This document shows, in pieces, positions 10,319 through 63,192 of a stretch of DNA of 64,000 nucleotides. This stretch comes from Mytilus trossulus. Lineage: Eukaryota. The notes below the pieces were generated by a model. That model was not told the DNA's origin and made no database searches. It worked only from the letters and a program-made list of their open reading frames with translations. The translations under genes and the position numbers were made by a program. The DNA is taken from positions 45,384,001 through 45,448,000 of the forward strand of contig NC_086374.1 in the NCBI RefSeq assembly GCF_036588685.1, given 5' to 3'. Each line of letters begins with the position of its first letter. The first letter of the stretch is position 1.

Positions 10319-11314
10319 CATCGGTACAAGGACATCATTCGTAAATATAACTCAACATGTAGACTTCTTATACGTTCCAGTATTTCACATTCAATCTTTT
10401 ATGATAATATTCTCTACAAAGCACAAAAATGTCAGTACTCACCTCAGAGGCCAACAAAACCTTTCAACAGACTTATTAAGAAGGGTATAGTTACGATATT
10501 GTTGTCAGGTCAATAAAGATTGCATATTTTTGCTTTAATATTGATTCACTTATAGTTTTTTGCATCGGAATTAAACAAATTTATTTAAAAACCAGAGGTT
10601 GGCATGACACGAGTTATGTTCTTCCCATATATTTTATGATGTCATGAACAAATAGAGAAGGATTGTCTCTGATATTCATATGATGAAGACATAATCTTTA
10701 AATTAGTTTAATTGAGGTCTGGAGCTGGCATGTCATTAACTGCTAGTAGTCTGTTGTTATCTATGTATTATTGTCATTTTGTTTATTTTCTTTTGTTACC
10801 TCTTTTGACATCGGACTCGGACTTCTCTTCAACTGAATTTTATTGTGCGTATTGCTATGCGTTTACTTTTCTACATTAGCTAGATGTATAGGAGGAGGGT
10901 TGAGATATAAAAAAAACCCGTTTACCCACGCATCATTTTTTCGCCTGTCCCAAGACAGGAGCCTCTGACCTATGATAGTCTTGTATGATTTTTAAATTTT
11001 AGTTTCTTGTGTATAATTTGGAGTTTAGTATAATTAAACTCATCATAGATACCAGGACTAAATTTATTATATACGACAGACGCGCGTTTCGTCTACAAAA
11101 GACTCATCAGTGACGCTCGAATCCAAAAAAGTTCAAAATAACGTCCATTATCACTGAACTAGTATATATATTTGTTTAGAGGCCAGCTGAAGGACTCCTC
11201 CGGGTGCTAGAGTTTCTCGCTGCATTGAAGACCCATTGGTGACCTTCTGCTGTTGCCTGTTCTATGGTCGGGTTGTTGTCTCTGTGACACACTCCCCATT
11301 TACATTCTCAATTT
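10319..11314 (+). mobile_element. 5'-truncated retroelement, probably Penelope-like: frameshifted ORF end plus ~740 bp 3' region
   Basis: Translates as HRYKDIIRKYNSTCRLLIRSSISHSIFYDNILYKAQKCQYSPQRPTKPFNRLIKKG/YSYDIVVRSIKIAYFCFNIDSLI. A second copy at 4425-4945(-) encodes TKPLNRFIQKG..YDTIVRSSKMAYFGINIDSLI. A 3' tip copy lies at 24549-24665(-). Confidence 0.65.
11073..11118 (-). ncRNA. Type I hammerhead ribozyme, family 1, intact core with one stem I mismatch
   Basis: Minus strand reads gagcguca-CUGAUGA-gucu(uuugu)agac-GAAA-cgcgcg-UC^ugucgu. Confidence 0.88.
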
Positions 11315-13093
11315 AACTATCTATAACTTGCAGCTGGTGAAAGTTTTGTATTCCTTTTAAATGTATTTTTTTTGTGTCATGAACTTGAAACCATGTCAAT
11401 TTTATCAACGGAGACTATTTTGAACAATCTGGTCAAAATAGGTTCTCCGGGGCTCACACGCACGACATATAAACAACCGAACGAAAATAAGGAGCAAATG
11501 CGGATACCTAATTTTAATGAGATTGTACTTTGAAATGTGGATGCCATGACCTGTTATAATTGTACAGTTGTGACGTATTTAGTGTACAGTAAAGAAATCA
11601 ACCGCAAAAAATATTCAAGACTGTGTTAGTTACTCAAATGAAAAATCATTGGTGTCCGTAACTGAAATTTTGATGTCGGTAGTTCTGATAGATTTACATA
11701 ACTGGTCAGATATAAAAGGCCTCGAAATAAAAAATATAAAGCATTTAAAACAGAAAAGGCTTTGATTATGTACAAATCAACGTACTAAAACAATTATGAT
11801 ATACAGCAACAAACGACAACCAACGAATTATAAGCTCATGTCTTGGTACAGGGACATATAGAATTTGGCGTGGTTAAACATGTTTACCAGCATACAATAT
11901 AATAAGGTTACAGAGTCATGTTGGATGAAATATCATGAAACTTAAAACAGAGATAACATTTATTTTGAAAAGGGTGAACAATAATCAAATGCTGTCAAAT
12001 ACAGAATATGGCCGGGTTAAACATAATTGTTGACGCCCAATCATGACCCCCTCTATATCCATTTTCCTGGGGCAGTGGTGATACAGGAGAATATGAACAA
12101 AATATGAAAATCAGATTGAAATGCACAGACCAAGCGTAGTAGGGTACTTATACATCCTAATATGCTTGTTTCGAGTCCGGAATCTGTTATCTAGTTATTG
12201 TCTACTTTTTTTTTTGGGGGGGGGGGGGGGTACAGTTTTGTAGTATAAACCATGACTTTGCATGGTTTCCCCCTCTTGAACACAATAGTTGAAATACCGG
12301 GACTAAATTAAGCGCAAAAAACGGCATTGGTTCTGCCCGCTGTTGAAAACGATCGTGTGGCGTCTAATTGCTTATATCTTTTTTTACCTTCGGGCATGAC
12401 ACATTGTTTTCTCATTTGACATATTTTTTAAGTCAATAAATAACTTCAGATTAAAGTAATAATAAAAAGATAAAAAAAAAACCCAAGAAACAACAGAAGA
12501 ACAAAAGGGCAATCAAGCAATAGTTGAGGCTGCAATGACGATGGCAATCTTTAAACATTTACAGTAACATGTATTTTCAGATTGTTTTAATACATGACTC
12601 ACAAGTTCTTTTTTCACAGCAAACAATTTCGCCTTCAATTCATTTTATAAAAAAAACACAAACACAACCTGTAAACTACCTTGACGCATTTTTGTCATCT
12701 TTTGATCTACTACGCTTCAAAGATCGTTTTCATCCACACACATTATTTGTATGCATTAGTAAAATTAGACCAATGCATTACAAATTAAGAATTGCCATTA
12801 AACATATTACTTCCAGATTATATTAGTAATATTTAGATATACGAAAACATGAAACGATTAAAAAATTGAGGAAAACATATCTTGAGCATGCAGTTTGATA
12901 GTACGAACAATAATTTGATTTGAGAGGTAAATGACTAAATAACTATTATTCTATATTTATACTTCGTGACCTCCCTTGAGATCTGCTTCAAAAATATTGC
13001 AAAACAAAGGAATTTATTATAAGATAACATGATGCACAACTTCCTTTCATTTATTCAAACATCTTATTTTTGTTGACTATTACGATTACAAAG

Positions 13094-13470
13094 ATATAAG
13101 AAGATGTGGTATGAGTGCCAATGAGACAACTCTCTATCCAAGTCATGATTTGTTAAATTATACCGTTATAGGTCAAATTACGGTCTTCAACACGAATCCT
13201 TGGTTCACACCAAATAGAAGCTATAAAGCTATAAAGGGCCCCCAAAAATGACTAGTGGAAAATCATTCAAAGAGGAAAACCAACGGTCTAATCTATATAA
13301 AAAAACGAAAATTGAGAAACAATTTTGAACCACAAAAACAAACGACATTTACTGAACATCAGATGCCTGACTTAGAACAGGTGCAAACCTTCACCCTTAT
13401 CTGAAACAATAGTGTAACATCACAACAAAGAAAGACACACTATAAAAAATCAACTGAAATGGCTTAGCAT
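13094..13470 (-). mobile_element. Interspersed repeat family (AAGATGTGGTATGAGTGCCAATGAGACAACTCTC end)
   Basis: Clear similarity to 26116-26363 and to the reverse complement of 62775-62962. Confidence 0.75.
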
Positions 13471-14448
13471 GAACATTATACAAGATCTAAATCAATAGAA
13501 AAAAACCCAGTGAACTTGTTTGAAAATGAAATGTTCATTTGCCCTCATACACATGAAAATGAAGCACATCTATATTTTTTACCAAACGTGTGATACTTAA
13601 TAACTTTAGAAAGATGACTGGTTCTTAAAATTCTATGTTTAATTATTCTTGTAGTATCAGAAGAATAAGAATTGGATGTTACATTCGCCCAGTAGCCATC
13701 GGTTTTGTCATGATCCAACTCTGAAATTTGAACAGGAAAACATGACATAACACATTAAACGTCTACATTATAATGACGTATACAGTATCCTCTGATAACG
13801 GTTAATGCCGTGAATGTAGTTTTATGTTCAAAATTTTAATTTAAATGCTTTAAAATCATCTCACAGGTGTTTTGGAATGTTTTATTTTTAATCTAAATAT
13901 TCTGATATAAAAAAAGATGAGAACATATTTTAGAAAGCTTTACAGTATCTTGCTACTAACATACAATCTCTTACAGTGCGCTTGAAATTTTATCAGCTTT
14001 CTAATGATTCTCCCGGTGCGTCGGAAAATCGGTTTGTTAATAATCTAAGCCATTTATAAATTATCTGCAAGATACTCTCATTAAGAAATAATTTGGAAAG
14101 TAATTTGAGTAATTTTTAAACCTCTAGTAGATAATAGATTTTTTTTTAAATGTAGAACATCAAGAACTACAGGTGAGGAATCATATTGACCGAGAAGGGC
14201 GGATGTAATATAAAAGTTACCCGTTCGACCTTTTTTTTGTAAAAAGTTGTACTTGATGAGCTTGCTTATTTTTTTGGTATGTCAGTGCAGAACCTCAAGA
14301 TCAGCACGTGTAATCGGTGACCGTGAGTCATGTTTGACATTCCATTTAAAATCCGCTACTTATTTGGAATTTATGATAAAATAAGTTCGTTTTCATGCCA
14401 ATCGTAAGAAAAAGAAGTCAAAATGAACATGTTATAATAAGTTTAAGT

Positions 14449-14495
14449 TCGTGCGTCCGGAGCGCTTGATTCACCACCAACAGAAACGCTCAAGG
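14449..14495 (-). pseudogene. Degenerate family 2 hammerhead relic
   Basis: Minus strand ttgagcgttt-CTGTTGG...aagcgctccggacgca; flanks match the 35315 copy. Confidence 0.65.
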
Positions 14496-16230
14496 TCGAA
14501 TAGTTGAATGTCGATGATTAGAAACGAAACAGACGAAGAGCTATTCAAACAGTACTTAAAAGAAATCGACAAAACCATGTAAGGTCAAATTTGTAACCTT
14601 TGTTTTTTTTATAATTTTAAAATTTATAAACGGACAATTTTAGAAATGTGTATTATAATTAATTCATTACAATAACGAGGTACTTTATACATACATACAA
14701 TTAATTTGTCGATTATCAAATGTAAGGGTAATTGCCTATTCCGTCTAAGCATTTTGTTTTAAAACATTTTTTAGAAACTTTGATACAAATATAAAAAGGC
14801 CCGTAACTAATGTTAAATTTCTCCTCTATTTGTCTTATATAATGAAATTGCAAGTTCATTAGTTATCCAGCATCACGAATTCTTGGGTTGCAATTTACAG
14901 GTTACAGGCTGCATAGCATGGTTATTGCCCTTGTTCAGTTACTCTGCCTCTTCCTTTATATTAACTGACTTGATAAATGCAACCCGCTTCACACAGTCCA
15001 TATTACCGAATCTTGCAACCCGCATCCCAAACAATATATTATACTCATTCATGATATTTTGTTATAGAAAATTAACAGTTTAGAAAGTTCAAGTCATTTG
15101 CACTGGTTTATACGGAGCTATCAAGTGGCACACATGTTCCGATGATTCAACATAAACGTCAATACGTATATACATCGACAAAATTGGTATGTAAGTTATA
15201 AAAACATTTCGATGTTAGCGTTATCATTTGTTGGTTTTAAAGATCAATCAAGATATTTATGTGTTATAAAATTGACTTTTACGATCCGGCTGTTGTTCCA
15301 ATTCATATTTATTAAAATATAATTTAAGAAAGATAAAAAAAATCTTGATGGTGTTGTACGGTTCAAATAATTTTTCATACAAAGATATTGAACATCGATT
15401 TTCCATTATATTATTTCAAAGATTGAAAATGCTTATTTTTGTTTCTTTTTCGGCCATTTTTATGGGTATTTTGTATCTCACCCTTTGCTTTCAAATCTTG
15501 CACATGTATATTGTACATGTCTGGATTTAAAAAAGTTGCAATATTTCATCGGAGTCATCATTTGTATAGGTCGTTATATTATATGTACGTCATTGTCATG
15601 ATTGAAAAGTTTGCACTAACGCAGCCATAATATGTTGTAAAAAGTCTAAAATACTATAAGTTTAAACACCATGTAGATGTATGGACAAAACGTAATAGTT
15701 CTAAGACACTATTCTATGTTCCGACTATGTTTGAACTCATCAAAGATACCAGGCTTATAATTCATAATGCCACTAATTAAAATACATACACAAACACATA
15801 ATAAATCAAGCAAATACTAATTAAATAAAACACTTATTGTATATTTTATCTCATGGTAGAAACTGTAGATTGACCTTCAAACATCTTTTGATTTTCATTC
15901 GTTGTTGTGCTGTGCTCGCGTTGATGGATACCTCACACCTGCTCTTAATTTACACAAAGTTTTACGATATTTTAAGATAATTTGCAGCAAATTTAATTTT
16001 TAAATATCTGGTTTGATTCAAATGCTACATATACATTAAAAAGAACGTAAACTATAATTATCCCCGATACTCTTTTAGATATGTTTTCTGCATATTTATC
16101 AAAAAGTAATGCAAATACGTAAAATACCGATTGAATTAATGAATTTAGTATACAGACTAGTTTAACAAATACATGTGCTTTAGTGTATACATAAGTGTTC
16201 TGTGCTTAGCTGTCTTATTGTATATTTGTA

Positions 16231-35141: not shown

Positions 35142-35188
35142 CGAGCAACTGGTGAGTCTTGATTTAGACGAATCACGCGTCTTTCGTA
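35142..35188 (+). pseudogene. Degenerate family 1 hammerhead relic
   Basis: CTGGTGA-gtct...agac-GAAT-cacgcg-TC: core mutated, but aligns with the 42006 copy. Confidence 0.7.
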
Positions 35189-35314
35189 ATAGTAAGTAAG
35201 CCTGATAATTTTGTATAAGTTTTATATGAGTTTGGCTATTTATTTTAGGTATTTTTGTCATATAGCTCTTCAATGATTTTCGGTATGTATACATTTTTAA
35301 ATGTTTGGCTTTGA

Positions 35315-38948: not shown

Positions 38949-39099
38949 TTAGATGTTTTCTGCGTTGTATCGATCAATGTTAAATCATATTCCATTGATT
39001 ATTATAGTCTGTTCATAGTTTCTGTTACATTACTAGTTTTGGTCCTTCTGTTTAGGTTATATGCCTCTTTTAACATGTTTTAGTATTTATTTAATCCTT

Positions 39100-39152
39100 G
39101 CTTTCAAACATTTGGTCGAGAGTGTTCCTGATACAGGATAATCCAGACAAGA
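39100..39152 (+). pseudogene. Degenerate family 2 hammerhead relic
   Basis: tttcaaacatttgg..gagtgttc-CTGATAC-aggataatcca-GACA, aligns with 35296-35345. Confidence 0.6.
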
Positions 39153-41970: not shown

Positions 41971-42176
41971 AATAGTTATCAAAAGTACCAGGATTATAAT
42001 TTTATACGCCAGACGCGCGTTTCGTCTACACAAGACTCATCAGTGACGCTCAGATCAAAATAGTTAAAAAGCCAAATAAATACAAAGTTGAAGAGCATTG
42101 AGGATCCAAAATTCCAAAAAGTTGTGCCAAATACGGCTAAGGTAATCTACTCCTGGGGTAAGAAAATCCTTAGTAT
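41971..42176 (-). mobile_element. Retrozyme-like HHR-bearing repeat (5'-truncated monomer)
   Basis: Contains the intact HHR. Homologous to 49165-49349(+), 54035-54200(-), 61307-61620(+), 62986-63192(-) and 11031-11140(-); several share the 3' end GGTACCTTTGATAACTATT. Confidence 0.8.
42006..42051 (-). ncRNA. Type I hammerhead ribozyme, family 1, intact
   Basis: Minus strand reads gagcguca-CUGAUGA-gucu(ugugu)agac-GAAA-cgcgcg-UC^uggcgu. Stems I-III pair; GUC triplet; predicted cut at 42012/42011. Confidence 0.92.
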
Positions 42177-47100: not shown

Positions 47101-50100
47101 CGTGACACGTCTTATAATAATAACGTCTTATGATAACGCGGAAGAATACAAAGTTTTGTTTCCAATGTTAGAGCAGCTAAGATTGTATTCGAACAGTATT
47201 ATTTTGAACATGTACAGATGTGATCAATTTGTGGCAAAAATTTCCTGGCATTTCCCGAGAAAGTTAGCATGCATAGGTATTCCAATTGATTAGGTATAAA
47301 GATATATCAATATAAATTGTTAACATATACATGATCATTATACAATTACATTGGTAATTACGTTTAAGTATACATCTGTCCGTTCTTGAAACATGCGTTT
47401 CTTCTAATAATAATGGTTACCAAACATAGTCTATATTGCGAATGAAAATATAACCTAAATGATTGAACATATATTTGTTATATGCTAAATTGCATTTTTA
47501 TGTACACCATCCTCCTCAAAACTTATTAAGAAAAGTTATCATTTCATATAAGTGTATTACATTTTTAATGGCCCTGAAAATGAAATATGAAGGCGTATCG
47601 TTTATTGCACGGGTTCTGTATTAGAATTTGAGTAAGGTAAATAAATAGATAAATCAACTGTTTTCATTTGTACTACGAATGTAAAAGTAATTATACATGT
47701 ATGTCAAACATGTGCATTTTGTTACTTGATTTTATTATTTTTGTCTATTTACTCTATGCAGTAATCAAATTCAATTCCATGACGTCAATTTGACTGCTAT
47801 TAAAACTGCGGTCAGAAAGCGAGTTAGAGTGGTCTTTCTTTGTTCGTTGTTTATCTAACAAATTGAATCGTTCGTCTTTCTACAACATTACATTGTTACA
47901 ATCAACACACAAATAAAATGTGTTCTTATCAAGTCACTTAATGTATTCATATTAAAGGAAAGTATGTAAAAAACTCAACTTTATTTAAGAATTAAATCCG
48001 TTTTTTGTAACTTCACTGGGGATGTAAAAGCGTTGACCGAATTACATATAGCCATTACATTGACTGTCCCTTTGGTATCTTTCGTCCGTCCCTCTCTTGT
48101 ATGAAGCACGGAAACGATTCATTCCAAATATGTGCACACTGTGAACGCTTTTACAACCCTGTGAAGTTATAAAAAGAATTCAATACTTATTATTACCTTT
48201 TTTTTTTTTTAGCTAAGATCATTAAAACACGATTTTTAACAAGTTTACTAATTTACCTGTGCACTTTATTGTGGAACTTCGGGTCATCATTAATGATAAA
48301 TTGTATTGTGTAATGAAATTGATTAAGGAATAACACGAGATGTGCAGTTAGCCAATTAGAATAATTGAAACATACATGTAATGTAATTATTCGTAGTTAT
48401 ACGTGTAGTTCCATATAGCTCCATATCATTTTAATAAGTTCATATTAATATTCATATTCTAAGATTCCGGGTTTATAATTTTGTACGCCAGACGCAAGCT
48501 GATACTTTAGATAGACAAATTCCGGAGGAAAATTCTGGAAGTTGTGCCACAATCAATATCTCGCAGTAGCGAAAACCTTAGAGTTTTGAATAATTCCCCA
48601 TTTTCTATGCAGTACAGAAAATGATCAAATCAATGATGCATAATATTCATTTCAGAAGTTATGGCTACTGGAGTTGGAATAAACGTTTACCGACTCTTTA
48701 AGTCATACATTTGTAAATAGGTACACACGTATCTGTTCGTTATTTATGTCTTGAACTGTGCATTAATATATGAACAATTTCAGGTGAAAAATAATAAGGT
48801 TAATTTATACATTGTACATAAATAAATCTTCCACTCCGATTCTCCTCTTTTCGTTTAACTGTTATACTCGGTACAACAGTTTTCTATTTTACAATTACCA
48901 TAATTACTAATACATATAGAACTGAACAGTACAAGATCAAGATTGCCTGATCCGCTCTATGCACAACATTTGGTTGCGATAACCTTTTTATGTTTAAGGT
49001 GTTCCCGGGGATGTGTTATTGTAAGTGCTCGAAAACATGTTTAACGGCCACCACATTTGTCTATGTCTGTCTTAGATCAGTATTCAGTGGTTTTTGTCTG
49101 TCCTAGGCATTTTTCTTTTTTTGTTTAAGGGCCGTCTGTTTTTTCATTTCATCTCTTTTCTTATCCAAAGTAGATACCGTAACCTTGGCCGTATTTGGCA
49201 CAGATTTTTGGAACTTATGGTTCTCAATGCTCTTTGACTTTGTACTTGTTTTGGCTTTCGAACTTTTCTTTATCAAAACGTTACTTATGAGTCTTGTGTG
49301 GACGAGGTGTGCGAATTTATAATAAAGCATGCTACCTTTTGATAGCTATAATATGTGTGTTTCTCTGTTCTGCATGTTCTTCTAATTTTTTGTAGTCCTG
49401 TCTTGAAATATCGTCATTTAATGTTATATTTAACATAGCAATAAAAGCGGGAGGTTTGGCTAGCCACAAAACCAGGTTCAATCCACCATATTTTCTTTAA
49501 ATGTCCTTTTCCAAGTCCGGAAAATGGTCATTGTTATATTATAGTTCGTTTCTGCGTGTGTGGCATTTTGGTGTTGTGTTGCTGTTGTGTCTTTGTTCTC
49601 CTATTTTATTTGATGTGTTTCCCTCAGTTTTAGTTTGTAAGCCAGGATTGTTTTTTTCTCAATCGATTTATGAGTTTCGAACAGCGGAATACTACTGTTG
49701 CCTTTTTTTTCAATTCTTTACATTTTGTCATCTCGAGTACTTTAAATATGCTTATTCGGCTCATGGCTTTAGTTTCAGGAAGTGAACCACAACTTTTATT
49801 TTCCAACAACACGCATATACTGTTGAATGCTTTGGATAGTGACAAGTCGAGGGTACTTGTAGAAACAATGACTAGTTCTGTTTCATTTGTTGACTATCAT
49901 TTAACGGATGGATCTATTTACTGGTCAGATCAAAATAAGCAGACAATTAGCAGGTATCATTATAACTGTAACTTCTAAGCTTCTGTACACAATTCTTGTA
50001 TCGTTTATATTTTGACAATCGAATAAAAATAATGTAACTTCATGTGATTTTAATTTTAGAAATGAAAAATTGAATAGATGAATGATGAGAGAGATAAAGA

Positions 50101-53100
50101 GAGAATAAATCAAGACCAAAGTCTGTAGTTTATGTCATATGACTCTTCGAAAATTAATTATTATGAAATTATTGACAAATATATTATAGTGTATTACGAT
50201 AAAACATACAATAGTCGTATTTCAATGGTGTTTGTATATATAATTTTTTTCTCTCAAGGAAAACGTGTTCATTAGGTAACGAAAACTCAATCACAGAAAC
50301 TATAATTCAAAACTCGAAAGCCATGGGAATAGCCGTAGACTCAATAAACGATCATCTATATTGGGCAGACATAGATAGAGCTGCTATAAAAAGGTCTAGT
50401 TTGAATGGTTCCAGTATTGAAGTTATTTTAGACGAATCATTGCAAACTCCCGTTGCCATTACTATAGACACCTCAAACAGGTAAATAATGAGAGTTTCAA
50501 TAAATCTAGATTAAACAAGAATTTAATGTAAGAGAAAAATGGCAGTTGTCACTATTGTTAGGCTGTTCTTCGGTATTGTCTTATTATTCGAATGATATGT
50601 CTGTTTATAAGTCATGAAATTGTTCAAAACTAAAGTTACAACTATCTCAAGCAAATCTGAACTTTTACTACGTTTGCTGCTTCTAGATCTGGTTGTAATG
50701 CTGAACATGCATTATGTGTTTGACTTTACCAAATTATAGTGTTGAAGGTATCTAATTTCCAGTTTGTAACACGGGTCTGACACAATGAAATCGGTTTCTA
50801 ATATTTTTATTATGTTAAAGATTTGTAATTCAGTAAAAAGGATTTTATCGATTCTTTATTATACAGTATTTATTTTATATTAACTTATTATATGCATTAA
50901 TGGGTCAAGAAAAGGTGTTGGTTTTGTGATAAGAATAAAACAAAGTAACAGAATCATATACTCTTAAAAACAATCCAACAAATCAAGATAGATCATGGCT
51001 TGCTAGTAAACAGATAAGGATACGTTTGGTCTAGTATAGAAATTTGTATCATGCTGAAAGGCCCAAAAGAAAACTATTCACTTTTTATCTGTTAAAAACA
51101 AACTCTATGATGTAACCATTTAAAAAGATTCTACATATCAGAGTGCAAGTTATTGACAGCAAGCTTTACATGTACATACGGAAACAGCTAATAGATAATA
51201 GTGATAGGTAAATATATAATACTGTGATGAGTATGAGTAGAAAATTTTCACAATATTCCCGTTCATGCATATCAAAATAATCTTGATAACTACAGTAAAA
51301 AAAAAACAGAAACAAAAAATGGTAATCAACTATACAAACTTTTAGGAACATCACAAACATTTTATATGAGTGATGTTTATGAGGCAAAACTCTCACCAAA
51401 AACTTGTAGAATAAGATATTTTTATGACAATATAATGTTTCTTCATCGTTTATGTAAATTAAAATATCCTGCCAACCACATATACCATAATTTTAAACAA
51501 ATGTATTATCGTTTACAGCTGGTTATACTTCAGTGATCACGGCAGACATACAATCGAGAAATGTAAATTTGATGGAAGTAGCAGACATACACTTATAAAT
51601 GAAGACGTACAGACCCCATATGGTTTAGCCTTGGGTAAATAATTGAAGTTTCTTAATCAACCTGTACAGTGTCTAAAAAAGTAGTAATTTGTATACCGCT
51701 AAGCTACTATTTACATTTGCGCCATTTCTTTATTAGCACAAATTTGCTTTTTAAATAATATAATACTTTGGGACTGATTTTTTTTAATTTTTCAATTTTA
51801 AGCCATGGCGTTGTCAGTTTATTTTCGATCTATGAGTTTGACTGTCCCTTTGGTATCTTTACTACCTCTTTCGTGCATCAGATACCACTTTCGACAATAA
51901 AGTCTTAGCTCAAGGCCAAAATATTTGAAAAATCTAAAATTTATCAGTTTGGGCTAATGTATTATCTGGTATACTTGCCAATAGACAATTATCCACTACG
52001 GATCACAGGACGCAGATGTTATCAAGTTTAGGTCACCATAACGTCTTCATTAAATTTGGACAAAACTCATTTCGTTTACGAAGGGCTATATCAAAAGGTC
52101 TCCAGCATAACAAAAGAGTGACTAAAGATACCAGAGGGACAGTCAAACTTATAAATCGAATATAAACTGACAACTCTATGGCTAAAAATGAAAAAAGTCA
52201 AACAGACCATCAATAGTAAACATGACACAACATAAAAAGTAAAGAATGAACAACACGAACCCCACCAAAAACTAGGGTGGATCTCACGTGCTCCGGCAGG
52301 GTAAGCAGATCCTGCTTCATACGTGACACCCGTCGTGCTGCTCATGTGATAACAAATTCGGTAAATTGTCATGCAACAATTTAAATGACGAAACAAGCGT
52401 TATGACTTATGCTTAAACATTAAACTAAAAACGACTATGATAGACAACCACTTACTAGTGTACTACATGACTTTAATAGTCACATTTGTGACTAACTCCC
52501 TAACCTTGTAAATTGATGATACACACAACATAAGAACACTGTATAAATCAGTTTAAAAGGTCTTCAATCTTGGGCTAAAAACAAAAATAACTAATAAATG
52601 ATATCAGACCAGCATATGAGAACACCATGGGTTATTGTTTGGAAGGTTTTTTGTTGCTCAATCTAGTTTTCTAGTGTTTTGAGTACTGTTGTTTAACTTT
52701 TCATCGTTTTTCGAATTTTTGCCATGGCTTGTCAGTTTGTTTTCGAATAATGAGTTTGAATACAGCTTTGGTATATTTTGCCCTCTTTTAAAGTGACTAA
52801 TCAGATATTTATCAAACGATAAGATGAATATGAGTATTTGCATTATTTCTAACCAATTTTACCATCGTTTCGGATCAAATGGGTACGGTTGATTTACAAT
52901 TTACACAAGCTCTTTCAGGAAATGTAGTCATTAACAGACATTTATATTTACATACAGACTTGAACTCAAAAAGATTATATTGGACCGATTCTGCATTGTA
53001 TCACATCAAATCTTCTAATTTGGATGGCACTGATGTTAAAGTAGTCTCCATAGATGTATCATCATTGGTAGACATTTCTATTGTTGTTATGGGAATCGAC

Positions 53101-55491
53101 TTATATGGATCTTACTTGTATGTTAGTAATCTTGGAACTGGAGTATACAGGATACAGAAAAACAAACAGAATGCTGTGCCACACAGAATATCTGGGACGC
53201 ATCATTCAGCTTATGGTGTAAAGATAACAAGTAAGCATCATGAAACAAATAACTATTTATACTGTTTTCTTGGTGAACGTCCTAACAACATATATAACAA
53301 ATAGTGTTTATCCGTATATAAGCGTTTCTCAGCTTCCTTACCTTTCAAAATTTTAGAATTCATTCAAGCCAATGAAACTGGGCCCACACTAATGAACAAG
53401 CTTCCTTACTTTTCAAAATTTTAGAATTCATTCAAGCCAATGAAACTGGGCCCACACTAATGAACAATCAAACAGTATCACTTGTTGATAAGTAATACAT
53501 TGTAATTCCAAAATGACGCGTATGGTGTCTACAACTATAGCATTGCACCGTTAATCAAATATCTGCTACGAATGAACTTACTTTATTGTTCAAAAGAATA
53601 AATGAAAACTTCTGTAACTTGGTAATGTCTTCTATAAAATTGTTTTTAAAGACAGGTTTATATTACTTTTATATATGAATTTATTTATATTCGTATGACG
53701 TTTGGCATCATTCCGAGTCATATCTGAAGCCGCTCAACCTGTCGATAGTATGATACCATGATTCATCCCTATTCAATTACAAAATTTTATCAATGGTTGT
53801 CATAATTTAAAAGTTTTGAAATCTATATGCTACACAACAGACGGTAAACGTGAGACACACAAAACACAAACATACATATAGATGCCAACATAGAAAGTAG
53901 TTGAATTGATAACATAACGTCATATGTGTGGCTGAAAAATTGTCTTTTATGACCCCAAATCAGACGGAAAACCCGCATAACAATACATTAATAGGAAAGA
54001 AAGAAAATCAGCTTCTAAATAAAATAAGTATAGATAGCAGGATTTTGTACGCCAGACGAACTGTTCTTCTCCAAGAGACTCATTAGTGACGATCTAATCA
54101 AACAACGTCAACAAATCCCAAAAGGTATCAACTTGTGTATTATTATGGACCCACATTTCTCACTGGATTCTCAAAAATACAGCTAAGATAATCTTCTCCT
54201 GACTTATGTCTGAAAAAAACGGGAAAATAAGTATATTTGCCTGCACATTGCACTTACTACATGTATTTATAATGATTGATATTGTAGAAAGTCACAGTGA
54301 CACAAGTGATGCAACAACGATGAAAGGTAAGGTCATTTTGTCTTTTTCATTTTCATCATCATAATCGCTATCGTTTGTTTTTTATCTCCTTTTCATTTTT
54401 TAGTATAGTTTAGTAAATATTTATGTTGTTACAATAATATAATACATGCTCACATTCAATTTGTATATATATATATATATTGTATTGTGGAGAAGGCTAA
54501 CTTGTGTTTGATCCTTTTTCGCATTGATCAAATCAAATATGTTTAAACTAAAATATTATTCAAGATATATTTCATGGCGATGCAACATATATAATTGAAA
54601 CGATATTTCACCAGATTCCCGATTGCCACCATTTTTTTGAGTAACAATTAGGCCAGCAGAATCCAGGCGAATTGCAAACGATCTCAAATCATTCCATCCA
54701 CATTACAGTGAACAATTTCATTAACCACCTCTATGAACTTTTGTGTTTTGTGTTTTCTTATGGCAGTATGCTTCAAATATTCAGTACATAACGACATGTG
54801 ATTACAGCACATGTTTATAAAATCAGTACTTTAAATCTAGAGACTTCCTGTGTTTTTTGTAATTTCATCTGTGTATATATCTCCAAGACTAGGTGATTGT
54901 GCGTAAATAACAAACTTATCTTGCTGGAAAATAATATTCAAATCAATAAATAAGTATACTCTACATGTTTTACTTGAGTTAAATTGTAACGGAATGCGCG
55001 CAAATGAAACCAATAGTTGCGCGATAACATTTGTATTCCCGGTGAAAGTCTACCTGTTTGCTCGTATTCTCCTGTATGAAGAGCTTTTTATATACATAGA
55101 GTGTTATATATCCATGATGGGTAAATATTTAAAATTGGTATCTATCTGGTATCTCTGATAGCGAAAGTCTACCTGTTGGCTCTTATTCCCTTGTATGAAG
55201 AGCTTGTTATATACCTAGAGTGTTATATATTCATGATGGGTAAACATTTAAAATGGGTGTCTTGCATCTCTGATGTCATCGTAGAATTTCCTCATCCAGA
55301 TTTTGGATAAATATCATTTACACAACATGTCTGCATCAAAGTATTAAAACAATCAAAATCTGTAAGATATTTCGAACAAATAATTTTCCTTTTTTTGTTA
55401 TTTTTCAGGATCTGTTGGACAAATGATCATACTGTTTGCTGGAATCCTATTCGTTGAATTTCAAAACATTCATATCCATATAAAATGGTGA
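44081..55491 (+). CDS. Stand-alone YWTD beta-propeller protein (LRP/LDLR class B repeat family), 323 aa; join(44081..44138,49773..49953,50259..50480,51519..51634,52958..53230,54288..54326,55409..55491)
   Basis: All introns are GT-AG with compatible phases (1,2,2,1,1,1). Exons total 972 nt = 324 codons, open to TGA at 55489-91. Six blade motifs: LLFSN, IYWSD, LYWAD, LYFSD, LYWTD, LYVSN. Signal peptide MFTILSCTIVAFYLVQLKFVSG-SE; hydrophobic C-terminus. Confidence 0.85.
44228..44412 (-). mobile_element. tRNA-derived SINE with V-domain-like core, internally deleted, in intron 1
   Basis: B box GAGTTCGAATCCC, GGTCGGTGGTTCTCTCTGTGCACTCCGG core and TTAAACACCAATCAATCAA tail. Confidence 0.7.
47986..48189. 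mobile_element. Fold-back/palindromic MITE-like element with a nested retroelement tail
   Basis: ~55-bp inverted arms (TAACTTCACTGGGGATGTAAAAGCGTTGACC vs GTGAACGCTTTTACAACCCTGTGAAGTTA); foreign sequence at ~48050-48096. Confidence 0.7.
49165..49349 (+). mobile_element. Retrozyme-like repeat copy in intron 1, HHR core destroyed
   Basis: acgtta-CTTATGA-gtcttgtgtggac-GAGG at 49278-49313; flanks match the family. Confidence 0.7.
49773..49953 (+). CDS. Coding exon 2 (SGSEPQLLFSNN...VDYHLTDGSIYWSDQNKQTISR)
   Basis: Acceptor TTTAG at 49772 (alternative in-frame CAG at 49778), donor AG|GTATCA; LLFSN and YWSD motifs. Confidence 0.9.
50259..50480 (+). CDS. Coding exon 3 (KTCSLG...AMGIAVDSINDHLYWADIDRAAIKRSSLNGS...TPVAITIDTSNS)
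   Basis: Polypyrimidine tract plus AAG acceptor, donor AG|GTAAAT; classic GIAVD-LYWAD-I.RSSLNG repeat. Missing from the ORF track. Confidence 0.93.
51519..51634 (+). CDS. Coding exon 4 (WLYFSDHGRHTIEKCKFDGSSRHTLINEDVQTPYGLAL)
   Basis: TTTACAG acceptor, G|GTAAAT donor; YWTD-type repeat with P.GLALD. Confidence 0.93.
52112..52366 (-). mobile_element. Copy of the 58488 family in intron 4
   Basis: Near-colinear reverse complement of 58560-58805; explains the similar spurious ORFs SSTTGVT.EAGSAYP and SNTTGATCGAGSDYP. Confidence 0.8.
52958..53230 (+). CDS. Coding exon 5 (DLNSKRLYWTDSALYHIKSSNLDGTD...GIDLYGSYLYVSN...AYGVKIT)
   Basis: CATACAG acceptor, A|GTAAGC donor; canonical YWTD motif; lies within ORF 52879..53304. 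Confidence 0.93.
53331..53467. repeat. Tandem duplication, 68 bp x2 (intron 5)
   Basis: AGCTTCCTTAC.TTTCAAAATTTTAGAATTCATTCAAGCCAATGAAACTGGGCCCACACTAATGAACA occurs twice. Confidence 0.93.
54035..54200 (-). mobile_element. Degenerate retrozyme-like repeat copy in intron 5
   Basis: tacgccagacg...gactcattagtgacg; core reads CUAAUGA/GAAC. Confidence 0.6.
54288..54326 (+). CDS. Coding exon 6, 39-nt Ser/Thr linker micro-exon (KSHSDTSDATTMK)
   Basis: TTGTAG acceptor, AAG|GTAAGG donor, symmetric phase 1, open frame. Confidence 0.7.
55044..55273. repeat. Tandem duplication, ~119 bp x2 (intron 6)
   Basis: GAAAGTCTACCTGTT.GCTC.TATTC...ATCTCTGAT at 55044 and 55163. Confidence 0.88.
55409..55491 (+). 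CDS. Terminal coding exon (GSVGQMIILFAGILFVEFQNIHIHIKW*)
   Basis: Long polypyrimidine tract with TTTTTCAG acceptor, phase 1, hydrophobic stretch, stop followed by AATAAA. Confidence 0.75.
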
Positions 55492-57960: not shown

Positions 57961-57996
57961 TATAGTTTTAACTTTTTTTTCTCAAGCTTACGTGTC

Positions 57997-58142
57997 CAAT
58001 AAAATTAACGCTACCAATTTTCTTGCACCAGATGCGCATTTCGACAATATTTGTCTCTTCAGTGATGCTCGTGGCCAAAATATTTGAAATCCAAAGCTTA
58101 CATAAAAGATGAAGAGCTATAATCCAAAAGGTTAAAAAAGTA
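57997..58142 (-). mobile_element. Family 3 HHR-bearing repeat
   Basis: Carries the intact HHR; flank GAAGAGC...ATCCAAAA..AAAAAG resembles family 1; a relic copy lies at 51873-51935. Confidence 0.7.
58025..58070 (-). ncRNA. Type I hammerhead ribozyme, family 3, intact
   Basis: Minus strand reads gagcauca-CUGAAGA-gacaa(aua)uuguc-GAAA-ugcgca-UC^uggugc. AUC triplet; predicted cut at 58031/58030. Confidence 0.92.
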
Positions 58143-58805: not shown

Positions 58806-61306
58806 AAAAGACCACTTAAAGGAGAACAACAAAAATGGCCTCGTAAGACATATGGTCTTTTAATTCAGGTTTAACTTACATCACATGTACTACAAAGGTC
58901 TCTGTAACTGGTGGCCTTTAACACAGGCTTTTTTCTGAATACTGGTGGTCTCTGGCGCAGGGTTGACTGTATAAGCAATTGTATAAATATATACACATCA
59001 AACAATCAATATCCAGAAATAAAAACGACTTATGAGACACTATAAAACTAAAAATTTCAATAATAAAAAAAATATATATGACGTAAAAATTACAACAATT
59101 GGCAATAAAAAATTAATAATCAATATATTCAAATTATATTTAACTTTTTTAAGTCTGACTTTTTCTCATAAAATTAAACTTATAAAACTCTGAGACTAAT
59201 AGAAAATTCAGAAAACAGCTGTAAAACAATTTGTTTCGCCAGAAAAATATATAAAAGTTTGCAAAGGAGATATTGTTTATCATAACAGTTCACAATTTCA
59301 ACAAATTTATATCAAGGCAGTGAAAATCTTGAATGTATTTTGAACAGTAATGAAAAAGGTTATATCGAATATCGTGATTAAGCGTGCATTCCATAAGAAC
59401 ATGATTTTCTGTTTATACACTACATCTATCACCCTACGATAAACAAAGTCTGTCTTTTACGGGTGTATGCAGCCTGGAGTAACTGCCAATTCCGTTCGCT
59501 AGCAATGTATGTAAGCATAGATGGAAAATATATGTATTAAATAATGGCATAGGTGAAGACATCTACAATTCGGTATCGAAAAGTCTCATTATGCCGATAA
59601 TAAAAACAATACTCGTTTCATTGTTATTACAACAAATAGGTCATAATTACAGAATATGGTGTTTTGTTTTTGTATGTTTAAAATATGAATACCAAAATAG
59701 CCAAAACTTTGGACATAAAGTGTCTAGTCACATATAAGCACTAAACATTTTGAAATATCATTGCGTCTTAAAAACAGGACAGGTTTCGACTAAAAACAAT
59801 TGTCGGAGACTATTGGGGTTGAAAACATCGAATGCATTCCAGCGAAGTAAATGATGGAACATGTTTTATGAAAAGAAATTGACCATGATTGTAAAGACTG
59901 ATTTGGGAGAAATATACAGATTTGAAGGGTAAGACATATTTTTATGAAGATTGACCTATTTGAGAGAATTAGAGAGTAAGATGCGTATATTAAAATAATG
60001 TCTCCGATAGACATTTTAGTAGCAAATACGGCATGTGATATCTGATTACATTTGCTAAATAAACCCAAAAGTAGTGAATTTAGGTCGATGTAAAATGCTT
60101 TAGGCCCAAACAAGGAAATCATGGACAAATGTTAATGATAATTTAGTGTCAAATACTATACACGTACTATTTTACATCACTAAACTTATTCTAGATACTA
60201 GGAATAGAATAATGTACGCTAGACGCGTTATATATTAAGATCAATTTACACCATTGATATACAGTAATAACCAAACGCGTCAAAGGTCATACAGGCAAAC
60301 TATGTCTTTCATTTGTCCACCTGACATAGTTTTTTATGCGGCTATTTTTGTGAAATGTAGTGTTAAAAATAAAAAAAAGGATTTCTACCTCAGGGTAAAA
60401 ATGATCTTAGTCAGATATGGTACCACGTCTTTTTATGGTTTTGACTGGTTTTATGGTTGAGTCCTTCAATTATAGTTTGATAGGATCTTTACTACTGTCT
60501 TTTACATATATAGTTGAAATATGTTATGTATTATTGTTTGTAGTCTAAATAACTACATGTATTTTCTTGTAAATTCTTTGGACTAGTTATAGTATCGTGA
60601 AAATAATTGTATAAAGGTCGAGTTTGCATGTTAGTTACGTAAGCGTGTCACTGATTTTTATATCATGCAGTTTACATGCATGTTGTGTTGACTATTATAT
60701 TATATGGGTGTGCGTTTCTCTGTAATGAATGTTCTTGCGCGCGTTTTGGTTGTACTTTTGTCATGAAGTGTTGTATTTTTTTCAGTGTTATTTTTATCAT
60801 TGTAACAAGCGGAAGGTTTGTCGAGCCATTAAACCAGGTTAAACCCACCATATTTTTGTATTTACTGTAACTAATCGGGCATATGGCAGTTGTTATCAAA
60901 AAGTTCGTTTCAATGTATGTTAGTGTTTATTTTTGTTGCATTTCTGATCAGTGTTCCTGTTGTTTTTATGTTTTCCTCTTATAGTTAAATGTGTTTCCCT
61001 CGGTATTAGTTTGTAGTCTTGTGATTTGTTTTCTTTCAATCGATTTATGACTTTTGCACATCGGTATACTACTGTTGCCTTTATTTTGTATACTAAATTA
61101 CACATCTTGTACTTTTCATAATTGTAACCGTGAACACTTTGTTTACCCGTTTTTTTGTAAATATTGTATTTTCTTTTATATAAATGATAATTTTCTGTTT
61201 ATTTTCCTGAAGTATTTAATCCAAAAATGAATCAATACCAAGTAAATTATTGTTTATGAATATTGAAAATTGAAGTGTATACAATCAACTTTATTGAATA
61301 CAAATA

Positions 61307-61620
61307 ACAGAGGGTATCACCAGCACAGTAGTCTGAACTTCGGTGTTGACATGAATATCAATTATATGGTCATTTGTAAGAGTTAACTGTTTGCAAAAGT
61401 ATGAAATATTCGAAATACTAAGGATGTTCCCATCCCAGGCATAGATTATTTTAGCAGTATTTGGCAAAAGTTTTTGATTTTTTGGTTCTCAGTGCTCTTC
61501 AACTTTATACTCGTTTGGCTGTTTAACTATTTTTATCTTTTTGATCACTGCTGAGTCTTATGGAGACGAAACGCGCATATGGTGAATCAAATTAAAAGTC
61601 TGGTACCTTTGACAACAATT
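61307..61620 (+). mobile_element. Longest copy (~310 bp) of the retrozyme-like repeat, with mutated HHR (CUGCUGA) at 61543-61585
   Basis: Aligns with the reverse complement of 41971-42176; ends GGTACCTTTGACAACAATT. Confidence 0.75.
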
Positions 61621-62774
61621 GTATCATATTAATATGAATCTGTATCTTGATCTACCCAATTCATATATGCATCGATTTATCAAACTATGTAACGAAATGT
61701 ATCTATTCTTATAACGTTGTTTTTAATTGAATGTATGATCACATATTGAAGAAACAAATGAATTGAGGTAAAACAGCAAAGTTTAAAATAATATACAACA
61801 ATACATATGAACAGGAAAAACTTATTAACTTATTATCTACTATTTGATGCAGTATTATTTTTTTCTACCAATATAAACAAAACTGCATTTATATGTATGT
61901 ATGAAAATAATCTGTACACGTGAAAACCAACATACTGTATAGTAGTTTTCTTTGAACACCTTTAATAAGTTTTACAAAATAATTAATTTATTTTTGTAAC
62001 AGAAAAGAAAGGTGCAATAAACATGTGTTTGAGGGTTGGATAGCCTCAAATCAAGGTTAAACCTTCAATTTTTTTCTTCTAAAAGTGTCCTGTACTAATA
62101 CAGAATATGGTAGTTGTTATCTACAGTTCGCTTATAAGTATGTTTGCATTTCCCTTTGTTGCAGGTCAGTATTTCGTTTGTTCAGTTTTATTCCTCTTTT
62201 ACTTGATGTGTTTGAATTTATTTTTTTACTTAACTAAATTATTACTATAGCAACTGGTATACTTTTCTGGTTTCATTATCTGCACTGAATACATGTGAAT
62301 AAGTCAATGGTTTTATATCAAAATATAATAATACTAGGATTGCAATTTGAAGTATGAAGTTATTATTAAGGACAACAGTAGTATACCGGTTATCAAATTC
62401 GTAAATCGATTAAGAAAAAAAACATATCCGGGTTCCAAAATAAAATTGAGGGAAACACATCAAATATAAGAGGGAGAACTACGACACAACAGAAACACAA
62501 AACTAAAATGTAACACACACAGACACGAACTATAATATTACAGTGACCATTTTCCTCACTTGGAATAGGGCATTTTAAGAAAAATATGGTGATTTGAACC
62601 TGATTTTGCGGCTAGACAAACCTCACGCTTGTTTTAGATTTATGAGTTTCACTGTCCCTTTGGTATCTTTCGTCCCTCTTTTATTGTAATGTTAAATATA
62701 ACATTAAAAAGAGAACAATACATGACATGACTACATTACAAATAAATGCAAGGACAAAGACATTACAAATAAAC

Positions 62775-62962
62775 ATTAGACCGTTGGTTTTCCCGTTTGA
62801 ATGGTTTTACACTAGTAATTTTGGGGCCCTTTATAGCTTGTTGTTCGGTGTGAGCCAAGGCTCCGTGTTGAAGGCCGTACTTTAACCTATAATGGTTTAA
62901 TTTTTAAATTGTTATTTGGATGGAGAGTTGTCTCATTGGCACTCGCACCACATCTTCCTATA
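62775..62962 (+). mobile_element. Copy of the 13094 repeat family, opposite orientation
   Basis: Near-identical reverse complement of 26116-26292. Confidence 0.75.
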
Positions 62963-62985
62963 TCTTATTACACTAGGACATGCTA

Positions 62986-63192
62986 ATAGTTATCAAAGGT
63001 ACCTGGCTTTTAATTTAATACACCATACGTGCGTTTCGTCTAATCGAGAATCTTCAATTACGCTCAGAGCAAAAAAGTAAAGAAAGCCAAACAACTACAA
63101 AATTGAAGATCATTGGTGACCCAAAAATTCTAAAAAGCGGAGCCAAATACAGCTAGGGGTTTCTATGCCTAGGATAAAAAAATCATAAGTAT
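62986..63192 (-). mobile_element. Retrozyme-like repeat copy with mutated HHR (UUGAAGA) at 63019-63066
   Basis: Colinear with 41971-42176. Confidence 0.75.

What the first reader, a model, noticed from the sequence alone, without database searches (positions are those of the whole stretch)
11073..63066. About 12 hammerhead ribozyme motifs in three co-varying families across 64 kb
Seen: four motifs with complete CUGANGA/GAAA/NUH cores (11073-, 35315+, 42006-, 58025-) and relics at 14449, 35142, 39119, 49278, 51875, 54048, 61543 and 63019, plus stubs at 48485 and 60215. Families 1 and 3 differ by compensatory changes in every helix: stem I gcguca/uggcgu vs gcauca/uggugc, stem II gucu/agac vs gacaa/uuguc, stem III C-G vs U-A. 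That is direct structural evidence of a selected RNA fold. Known: type I HHRs mark Penelope-like elements and non-LTR retrozymes, which have been reported in mussel. Inference: several distinct self-cleaving RNA mobile families coexist here; families 2 and 3 may be uncatalogued.
Basis: partly seen in the sequence, partly recalled or inferred. Interest (0 to 1): 0.85.

Follow-up and report, generated by a model that had tools for sequence, protein, structure and literature searches.

The report
Truncated mussel hammerhead retrozyme copies
The dozen hammerhead-ribozyme motifs are real, but they are mostly dead, 5'-truncated copies of an already known kind of mussel mobile element (about 350-base "retrozymes" that make circular RNA); two of the three families seem undescribed, and all copies share a fixed end that hints at how they are copied.

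Summary
Observation confirmed. Thirteen of the 14 listed sites are genuine copies of one repeat superfamily carrying a type I hammerhead ribozyme (HHR); 60215 is marginal. Rfam gives no gathering-level hit, but scores 42006 and 11073 just under threshold (32.6 and 31.2 bits against 34).

The three families are homologous over a whole ~350-bp unit (65-72% identity). Elsewhere in this Mytilus-like genome they form head-to-tail arrays of 349-358 bp, the known metazoan non-LTR retrozyme architecture. Family 1 is the published Mg353 / HHR A+B element. Families 2 and 3 (835 and 5,015 exact intact cores genome-wide) match nothing in the papers I could read.

The compensatory changes between families are real: six pairs change on both sides, and 92% of cells pair against 18-46% in slid controls.

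No window copy is a full unit. Each is a 5'-truncated piece ending 33-44 nt past the cleavage site, which points to reverse transcription from a fixed start. A young Penelope-like element in this genome has a mini-hammerhead 44 nt from its own end, but no sequence link was found.

Family 3 RNA is abundant and reads run from unit to unit, but no cut ends pile up at the predicted site.

This scan has noted such retrozymes many times elsewhere in this genome. Verdict: new members of a known kind, moderate interest.

The parts
41971..42230 (-). Family 1 retrozyme copy (0.73 unit, 85-95% identical to natural units). Intact HHR at 42006-42049; predicted cleavage between 42012 and 42011; 41-nt tail ending ...CCTGGTACTTTTGATAACTATT.
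11035..11138 (-). Family 1, published Mg353-type variant (0.3 unit). HHR at 11073-11116 with one U.U mismatch in stem I; predicted cleavage 11079|11078.
57998..58142 (-). Family 3 copy (0.42 unit, 96-97% identical to the family, so young). Intact HHR at 58025-58068; predicted cleavage 58031|58030; 33-nt tail.
35221..35391 (+). Family 2 copy (0.48 unit, about 87% identical). HHR at 35315-35356 with complete core, A.A at the base of a 2-bp stem II and a G.U in helix III; predicted cleavage 35350|35351; 41-nt tail.
35061..35220 (+). Old family 1-like relic (about 69% identical). HHR remnant at 35145-35187 with a mutated core (CUGGUGA, GAAUCA). Its tail ends exactly where the family 2 copy begins.
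61310..61620 (+). Family 1 relic (0.87 unit, about 81% identical). HHR remnant at 61544-61583 (core CUGCUGA).
62985..63194 (-). Family 1 relic (0.59 unit, about 77% identical). HHR remnant at 63020-63063 (core UUGAAGA).
49156..49345 (+). Family 1 relic (about 77% identical) with decayed core and partly deleted helix III. Lies in an intron of a plus-strand YWTD-repeat gene.
54015..54201 (-). Family 1 relic (about 67% identical), core CUAAUGA, GAAA box lost.
14425..14670 (-). Family 2 relic (about 66% identical), core decayed.
39059..39151 (+). Family 2 relic (about 69% identical); 5' half of the HHR only.
51869..51944 (-). Family 3-like relic with the CUGANGA box deleted.
48458..48495 (-). Extreme 5' truncation of family 1: the last 5 nt before the cleavage site plus the tail.
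60186..60227 (-). Possible tail-only stub of family 1; marginal.

Best explanation
The motifs are the ribozyme ends of about 14 dispersed, 5'-truncated insertions of a mussel non-LTR retrozyme superfamily. This is a non-coding ~350-nt unit with one type I hammerhead per unit. Shown: the three families share homology along the whole unit and form 349-358-bp head-to-tail arrays elsewhere in the genome. They differ by compensatory changes in helices I, II and III. Helix III in all of them is 2 bp capped by a palindromic GCGC loop. Insertions of 0.3 to at least 5.8 units all end at a fixed point 33-44 nt downstream of the cleavage site and start at arbitrary points. Family 3 RNA is abundant and reads cross from unit to unit. 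Inferred from published work on the family 1 element: arrays are transcribed as multimers; the hammerheads cut them into unit-length RNAs, alone or more efficiently as double hammerheads through the palindromic helix III; a host ligase closes them into circles. Inferred here: a reverse transcriptase, most likely of a Penelope-like element, starts cDNA synthesis at a fixed site just 3' of the ribozyme on a circular or multimeric template. It runs round for a variable distance and stops. That gives a fixed 3' end, a variable 5' end and non-integer unit numbers. The copies in this window are products of that process and are not sources: none has two ribozymes, and most have since lost the catalytic core by neutral decay.
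For: Motifs and significance. Whole-unit homology of the families (65-72%) and the shape of the window copies (3' part of a unit, cleavage site, 33-42-nt tail). Tandem arrays: family 1 at 354-358 bp, family 3 at 349 bp and family 2 at about 352 bp. Genome-wide exact intact cores 18,232 / 5,015 / 835 with zero in reversed-pattern controls. Identity of family 1 with the experimentally studied Mg353 retrozyme, which self-cleaves in vitro at about 0.1 per min and gives circRNA up to 1% of total RNA: PMC7229834 text and supplement. Covariation: 92.1% of cells paired against 18-46% in slid controls, six pairs with changes on both sides, 15.2/16.2 being C-G, A-U or U-A; a further GCGC to CCGG swap in the 575-bp sister family. 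Fixed 3' end: family 1 in 10 of 13, family 2 in 15 of 18, family 3 in 16 of 17 insertions, with scattered 5' starts, and RNA reads that leave the unit at +33/34 into many different flanks (table 7). Double hammerhead is the MFE homodimer for family 3, -26.3 against 2 x -7.3 kcal/mol. Expression: 829-2,657 reads per sampled run, and 53-342 unit-to-unit joints, about 87% of the reads at the unit end in X21. PLE parallel: a young C-terminal-EN PLE has a U3-A8 mini-hammerhead 44 nt from its 3' end in 7 of 8 copies, with the same variable 5' truncation.
Against: No excess of RNA ends at the predicted family 3 cleavage site (table 6), so cleavage in vivo is not shown. This is expected if most RNA is religated circles or uncut multimers, but it is not positive evidence. 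Unit-to-unit reads cannot tell circles from multimers. Window copies score below Rfam's gathering threshold. Family 2 lacks the conserved G10.1-C11.1 pair (A.A instead), so its activity is doubtful. No sequence similarity was found between retrozyme tails and the 3' ends of the two PLE families I could examine. The second PLE family has its mini-hammerhead 80-190 nt from the end, so the geometric parallel is not general. Whole units fold only slightly better than shuffles (z -1 to -1.9). No clear target-site duplications were seen.
Confidence: 0.8

Rival explanations
1. The repeats are ordinary satellite DNA spread by unequal crossing-over and segmental duplication. The hammerhead would be a transcribed passenger with no role in mobility.
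For: Long, very homogeneous arrays exist, e.g. more than 40 units at C1:269295-284873. Unequal exchange surely contributes to array growth, and the 2026 preprint argues for this.
Against: Thousands of dispersed solo and short copies in unrelated flanks, all with the same 3' terminus and random 5' starts. Recombination does not produce that pattern. The core is conserved and the stems change compensatorily between families that are only 65-72% identical.
Confidence: 0.07
2. The copies are solo terminal repeats (pLTRs) of 5'-truncated Penelope-like elements, not a separate non-autonomous element.
For: PLEs carry hammerheads near their 3' ends and are mostly 5'-truncated (PMC4209133). PLEs are abundant in this genome: 149 GIY-YIG matches.
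Against: Longer copies continue into further ~350-bp units, never into an RT/EN ORF. The window has no such ORF. The PLE 3' UTRs I examined share no sequence with the units. The PLE hammerheads are minimal U3-A8 variants, not canonical ones.
Confidence: 0.05
3. They are retrozymes, but mobilised by a LINE with stringent 3'-end recognition, as SINEs are, and not by a PLE.
For: A fixed 3' end with 5' truncation is also the LINE/SINE signature. No tail match to a PLE was found. The authors of PMC7229834 leave LINEs open.
Against: No poly(A) or short tandem repeat at the 3' end. The ribozyme-plus-roughly-40-nt-tail geometry is shared with a young PLE here. Retrozymes and PLEs co-occur and are related in vertebrates (preprint 10.64898/2026.07.22.740005).
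Confidence: 0.15

Closest known systems
Mytilus galloprovincialis non-LTR retrozyme Mg353 with HHR A / HHR B (Cervera & de la Pena 2020, PMC7229834)
   Same: Family 1 is this element. The 11073 copy matches the cloned construct and primers nearly base for base. Unit length is 354-358 bp, it is arranged in tandem, GC is 36-39%, and the helices are the same. The 42006-type differs in loop 2 and the tail, as the paper describes for A against B.
   Different: Families 2 and 3 have different stem I, II and III sequences and, for family 3, N7 = A; they are only 65-72% identical to family 1 over the unit. Exact intact family 1 cores number 18,232 here, against about 4,600 motifs in the 2016 draft. 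The window copies are truncated solos, not arrays.
Newt / axolotl satellite-2 hammerheads and the double-hammerhead model (Forster et al. 1988; PMC7229834)
   Same: Type I topology. Short helix III capped by a palindromic loop, so that two copies can form an extended helix III. Tandem units of about 330-350 bp.
   Different: Helix III here has 2 bp, not 1. The family 1 type is reported to cleave as a single motif (about 0.1 per min). No sequence relationship.
Minimal hammerheads of Penelope-like elements (Cervera & de la Pena 2014, PMC4209133; Lunse et al. 2017)
   Same: Palindromic 15.2-16.2 region. Ribozyme close to the 3' end of a 5'-truncation-prone retroelement. In one PLE of this genome the cleavage site lies 44 nt from the end, as in the retrozymes (33-44 nt).
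   Different: PLE hammerheads here use the U3-A8 core variant, have an unpaired base before stem II or no helix III stem, and sit behind an RT/EN ORF. The retrozymes are canonical and non-coding, and their tails share no sequence with these PLEs.
Vertebrate non-LTR retrozymes as PLE derivatives (Li, Clavereau & Pollet 2026 preprint)
   Same: Same class and same proposed dependence on PLEs.
   Different: That work shows sequence kinship with pLTRs in Xenopus and says invertebrates were not examined. Here only a geometric parallel was found.

Membership tests
Hammerhead ribozyme, type I (Rfam RF00163) | Conserved catalytic core CUGANGA ... GAAA ... NUH in type I order (open helix I) | tested here: met
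   Present in 42006-, 11073-, 58025- and 35315+; lost in the relics.
Hammerhead ribozyme, type I (Rfam RF00163) | Score at or above the curated gathering threshold (34 bits) | tested here: not met
   Window copies score 32.6 and 31.2 bits; families 2 and 3 are not reported at E<=10. Sister copies of family 1 in the genome do pass: 42 of 74 scored, up to 40.9 bits.
Hammerhead ribozyme, type I (Rfam RF00163) | Three helices supported by covariation | tested here: met
   92.1% paired against 18-46% in slid controls; six pairs changed on both sides. Only three lineages, so few independent events.
Hammerhead ribozyme, type I (Rfam RF00163) | G10.1-C11.1 pair at the base of helix II | tested here: inconclusive
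   Met in families 1 and 3. Family 2 has A.A followed by only two G-C pairs.
Hammerhead ribozyme, type I (Rfam RF00163) | Site-specific self-cleavage | not testable with these tools
   Published for the family 1 Mg353 construct. RNA-seq shows no pile-up of ends at the family 3 site.
Metazoan non-LTR retrozyme | Head-to-tail repeats of 150-450 bp, one type I HHR per unit | tested here: met
   Periods of 349-358 bp for all three families in the genome. In the window itself only sub-unit fragments occur.
Metazoan non-LTR retrozyme | Low GC; no LTR, PBS, PPT or coding capacity | tested here: met
   GC 0.36-0.39. Units abut directly. No ORF of 150 aa or more with a domain in the window.
Metazoan non-LTR retrozyme | Expressed as unit-length linear and circular RNA | tested here: inconclusive
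   Family 3 RNA is abundant with unit-to-unit junction reads, but circles cannot be told from multimers.
Penelope-like element | ORF with telomerase-like RT and GIY-YIG endonuclease | tested here: not met
   None in the window. PLEs occur elsewhere in the genome.

The most novel reading that the evidence does not exclude
The fixed 3' terminus 33-44 nt past the cleavage site, shared by all families and mirrored by a bona fide Penelope-like element of the same genome (mini-hammerhead 44 nt from its end), could mark the site where a PLE reverse transcriptase recognises a 'hammerhead plus tail' module. The enzyme would start cDNA synthesis internally on a circular RNA. That would give the first sequence-level handle on how invertebrate retrozymes are copied, and a function for the otherwise unexplained PLE hammerheads.
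Probability: 0.3. Interest if true: 0.6.

Novelty: new member of a known kind. Interest (0 to 1): 0.35.

Why it matters
Retrozymes are a major but poorly annotated source of circular RNA in invertebrates. In this window their debris makes up about 3.5% of the sequence, roughly one copy per 4.6 kb. That fits the rough first-look count of about 218,000 candidates genome-wide. This far exceeds the roughly 5,000 motifs on record for mussel, and family 3 alone contributes 5,015 intact ribozymes that do not fit the published HHR A/B description. The practical points are: (1) such copies should be masked and named as retrozyme fragments, not scored as novel ribozymes; (2) three or more co-existing, covarying subfamilies give a natural mutational series for hammerhead structure-function work; (3) the fixed 3' end is a concrete, testable clue to the unknown reverse-transcription step. 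The 2020 review says the repeats show no motif pointing to the autonomous partner.

Tried and rejected
1. Rfam at gathering threshold found nothing in the window. That is a threshold effect, not absence.
2. Looking for the autonomous partner. 30 GIY-YIG loci were scanned with my model, by BLAST against the units and with all Rfam models. The only retrozyme-like hits were ordinary nearby insertions (L070, L078) or a separate 575-bp tandem family (L077). Tail motifs were not found at PLE ends.
Naiad-type and other PLE 3' ends were therefore never examined.
4. RNA ends at the cleavage site: none above the tool's threshold. This does not test circles.
5. No held locus carries full units of two families, so only family 3 could be laid with reads.
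6. Literature search for the family 2 and 3 core strings returned only chance primer matches.
7. Whole-unit circular folding gave weak z-scores, so I make no claim of an unusually stable rod.
8. Target-site duplications were looked for by eye in window copies and 17 family 3 insertions; none was convincing.
9. The 221-aa ORF at 32040-32705 has no Pfam match.
10. The mir-like, SECIS and snoRNA hits are all far below threshold and were dismissed.
Full report

Yes. The four "complete" motifs are at the stated coordinates and carry the CUGANGA, GAAA and NUH boxes in type I order.
- A strict descriptor of my own (core, at least 3 bp in stem II, at least 2 bp in helix III, at least 4 consecutive bp in stem I) finds 42006(-) and 58025(-). 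It expects 0.04 hits per Markov-shuffled window.
- 11073(-) misses only through one U.U mismatch in stem I.
- 35315(+) misses because its stem II is two G-C pairs over an A.A.

Rfam gives nothing at gathering threshold. With the permissive threshold, Hammerhead_1 scores 42006-42049(-) at 32.6 bits (E 3.3e-4) and 11073-11116(-) at 31.2 bits (E 9.1e-4), just under the 34-bit cut-off. In the rest of the genome the same family passes the cut-off: 42 of 74 scored candidates, up to 40.9 bits.

A covariance model built from 32 window and genome copies recovers six relics with falling significance: 61544+, 63020-, 35145+, 54049-, 49278+ and 14462-. Local alignment to natural units against 200 shuffles confirms the rest:
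- 51875-: family 3, z 13.1.
- 39119+: family 2, z 9.6.
- Stub 48485-: family 1, z 8.7.
- Stub 60215-: marginal, z 3.6-5.0.

**2. What the motifs belong to**

The sites share flanking sequence, not only the core. The window's assembly is 1.30 Gb with 14 large scaffolds, which is Mytilus-like. In it, each family occurs as head-to-tail arrays:
- Family 1: period 354-358 bp.
- Family 3: period 349 bp, copies 95-97% identical.
- Family 2: period about 352 bp.

Natural units taken from cleavage site to cleavage site are L002:792-1149:-, L007:831-1184:+, L036:1247-1599:+ and L020:913-1261:+. They are homologous to each other over their whole length (65-72% identity) and have 36-39% GC. So these are subfamilies of one element, not three unrelated elements.

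Exact intact ribozyme cores in the genome number 18,232 (family 1), 5,015 (family 3) and 835 (family 2). The reversed-pattern controls give zero.

A further young tandem family has a period of 574-579 bp and a family 3-like hammerhead whose helix III loop is CCGG instead of GCGC.

**3. Comparison with the literature**

Cervera and de la Pena (2020, PMC7229834) described about 5,000 type I hammerheads in M. galloprovincialis. They sit in 350-390-bp tandem repeats, were named non-LTR retrozymes, self-cleave in vitro at about 0.1 per min, and are expressed as 300-400-nt circular RNAs at up to 1% of total RNA.

Their supplement prints the cloned unit Mg353 and its primers. The 11073 copy matches it almost base for base.

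Families 2 and 3 differ in the stems themselves and are not covered by that description. A full-text search for their core strings found nothing relevant. I could not query Repbase or Dfam.

**4. Covariation**

On the 32-sequence alignment, 92.1% of cells form standard pairs, against 18-46% when the 3' partners are slid by 1-3 columns. Six pairs change on both sides:
- Stem I: G-C to A-U, A-U to C-G, and one C-G to U-A cell.
- Stem II: two U-A to A-U changes.
- Position 15.2/16.2 of helix III: C-G in family 1, A-U in family 2, U-A in family 3.

The 575-bp family adds a GCGC to CCGG swap. It is visible both in DNA and as linked G1255C and C1258G variants in RNA reads.

These changes separate only three or four lineages. 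They represent about six or seven independent compensatory events. That is good evidence for a selected fold, but not the dozens that cell counts suggest.

**5. Anatomy of the ribozyme**

- Helix I is 6 bp.
- Helix II is 4-5 bp in families 1 and 3. In family 2 it is 2 bp over an A.A.
- Helix III is 2 bp capped by a palindromic GCGC loop, so the eight nucleotides A-N-GCGC-N'-U form a palindrome.

This is the "canonical metazoan type I" design. It can form an extended helix III between two copies, the double hammerhead of Forster et al. 1988 as described in PMC4209133.

ViennaRNA gives the single-motif hammerhead fold only -2 to -5.7 kcal/mol, and it is not the MFE. For family 3 the MFE homodimer is exactly the double hammerhead (-26.3 against 2 x -7.3 kcal/mol). 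The family 1 type is nonetheless reported to cleave as a single motif.

**6. Anatomy of the insertions**

No window copy is a full unit. Each consists of the 3' part of a unit starting at an arbitrary position, then the cleavage site, then a tail of fixed length:
- Family 1: 41 nt, ending ...CCTGGTACCTTTGATAACTATT.
- Family 2: 41-42 nt.
- Family 3: 33 nt, ending ...GGTACCGTTAATTTTATT.

Among genomic insertions that lie fully inside the fetched loci, these end at the same unit coordinate:
- Family 1: 10 of 13, at coordinate 39-44.
- Family 2: 15 of 18, at coordinate 40-44.
- Family 3: 16 of 17, at coordinate 33-37.

The 5' starts are scattered, and lengths run from 0.27 to at least 5.8 units. 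There is no poly(A) and no convincing target-site duplication.

RNA reads independently show the same boundary.

A fixed 3' end with a variable 5' end and non-integer unit numbers is the signature of reverse transcription that starts at one defined site and stops at random, on a circular or multimeric template.

The 2020 papers do not describe this. The review states that the repeats show no motif that could reveal the autonomous partner. Other notes of this scan had remarked on a fixed 3' end in this genome. I tested it here on my three families.

**7. State of the window copies**

Identity to natural units ranges from 96-97% (58025, family 3) through 85-95% (42006) and about 87% (35315) down to 62-81% for the relics. 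So several waves of insertion are represented.

The relics have lost the core: CUGCUGA, UUGAAGA, CUGGUGA, CUAAUGA or deletions. That is neutral decay after insertion.

Together the copies cover about 2.2 kb, or 3.5% of the window, roughly one per 4.6 kb. This agrees with the rough 218,202 first-look candidates in 1.3 Gb.

A YWTD-repeat exon at 52879-53304(+) indicates a plus-strand gene. The relics at 48485, 49278, 51875 and 54048 are then intronic, and all are inactive.

**8. Expression**

Family 3 words occur in runs under four organism labels from 12 studies. I laid four raw-read RNA runs on one natural family 3 unit, permuted so that the cleavage site sits in the middle (L020:1088-1436). 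Results:
- 829-2,657 reads were laid from 6-18% of each run, giving depth in the hundreds.
- There is a 2-4-fold excess of one read direction in two of the runs, X21 and X23. This corresponds to ribozyme-sense RNA if the libraries are of the usual stranded type.
- 53-342 reads per run join the unit's end back to its start. In X21 that is about 87% of the reads reaching the end.
- Half to two-thirds of the laid reads run on into unlike sequence. They come from related families (the family 1 tail joined to the shared unit body; the 575-bp family) or from copy-flank junctions.
- No pile-up of molecule ends appears at 1261|1262.

Cleavage in vivo is therefore not demonstrated for family 3. The result fits religated circles or uncut multimers, which cannot be told apart on a tandem locus.

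**9. The autonomous partner**

The genome has many PLEs: 149 GIY-YIG matches, with ORFs up to 1,056 aa. They are of both the N-terminal-EN (Naiad-like) and C-terminal-EN kinds.

One young C-terminal-EN family (L053, L069-L073, L076, L081) is 97-99% identical between copies.
- It shows variable 5' truncation and a common 3' end at a (TA)n target.
- Its 3' UTR holds a minimal hammerhead with the published U3-A8 core variant.
- In 7 of 8 copies, the predicted cleavage site of that hammerhead lies 44 nt before the element's end.
- This is the same geometry as the retrozyme tails.

A second family has a similar mini-hammerhead, but 80-190 nt from the end. Neither shares sequence with the retrozyme units or tails.

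A 2026 preprint shows sequence kinship between retrozymes and PLE terminal repeats in Xenopus, and states that invertebrates were not examined. The PLE model is thus the best-supported inference, but it is not shown here.

**10. Verdict**

The elements are a known kind (mussel non-LTR retrozymes).
- Family 1 is already published.
- Families 2 and 3 are apparently undescribed subfamilies, and family 3 is large and young.
- The window holds only truncated, mostly dead copies.

The fixed 3' end and its parallel in a PLE are the one feature that goes beyond the papers I read. This scan has already flagged such retrozymes many times elsewhere in the same genome (144 notes hold the search words).

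Noticed in passing
window 35061-35391 (+): The 5'-truncated family 2 copy (35221-35391) begins exactly where the 39-nt tail of an older family 1-like copy (35061-35220) ends. This is either an insertion at the end of an earlier copy, or a chimeric cDNA made by template switching onto an RNA whose 3' end is the tail terminus.
   Followed up: partly
L077:1-400 (G000:C10:2903563-2903962) and about 40 listed places: A separate young tandem family (98% identical, period 574-579 bp). It has a family 3-like hammerhead whose helix III loop is CCGG instead of GCGC and whose cleavage-site triplet is AUA. Its RNA shows up in the reads as loose ends at L020 1225 and 1266.
   Followed up: partly
L053, L069-L073, L076, L081 (oriented with EN on +, about 1880-1965): A young C-terminal-EN Penelope-like element inserted in (TA)n. 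Its 3' UTR holds a minimal hammerhead with the U3-A8 core variant (UUGAAAA ... GAAA-GCGC-UA), 44 nt from the element's 3' end.
   Followed up: partly
L054, L077, L079 (oriented about 1850-2080): A second PLE family. Its 3' UTR has three tandem repeats of about 60-70 nt (..TTAAGGCAGCTAAATCCAA..GAGCTGCAAA..) ahead of a U3-A8 mini-hammerhead, and it has two alternative 3' ends, both at (TA)n.
   Followed up: no
unit coordinates about 40-125 of L002:792-1149:-, L007:831-1184:+, L036:1247-1599:+, L020:913-1261:+: All families keep a conserved central domain just after the tail (CACTGGGTCGATGCC...CCAGCCCAGTAGTC...). It folds into the same long hairpin plus a short 8-bp hairpin in every circular MFE. 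It is the best conserved part outside the ribozyme.
   Followed up: no
window 52879-53304 (+): ORF with an Ldl_recept_b (YWTD) repeat, E 1.1e-4, 23 bits against a cut-off of 21. This is an exon of a plus-strand LRP-like gene that another note of the scan places at 44081-55491.
   Followed up: partly
window 29300-29690: Nested inverted repeats built from GCAGCAGGTCTGCAGCAAACA-like words. They give sub-threshold microRNA-precursor hits on both strands (E 0.5-4). Probably a hairpin-forming repeat or MITE.
   Followed up: no
window 16157-16518: Three overlapping ORFs on both strands. One has a weak cysteine-pattern hit to Defensin_1 (E 2.6e-6, with no stretch passing on its own). It looks like a low-complexity repeat, not a gene.
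   Followed up: no
window 10402-10825 vs 4561-4992; 11210-11314 vs 24551-24655; 57708-57905 vs 58482-58665: Other unrelated interspersed or inverted repeats lie next to the retrozyme copies (74%, 91% and 74% identity).
   Followed up: no
G000:C1:269295-284873 and C1:113382-118368: Very long, homogeneous family 1 arrays (more than 40 and 15 units, period 354-355 bp). These are likely transcription sources and sites of array growth by unequal exchange.
   Followed up: no
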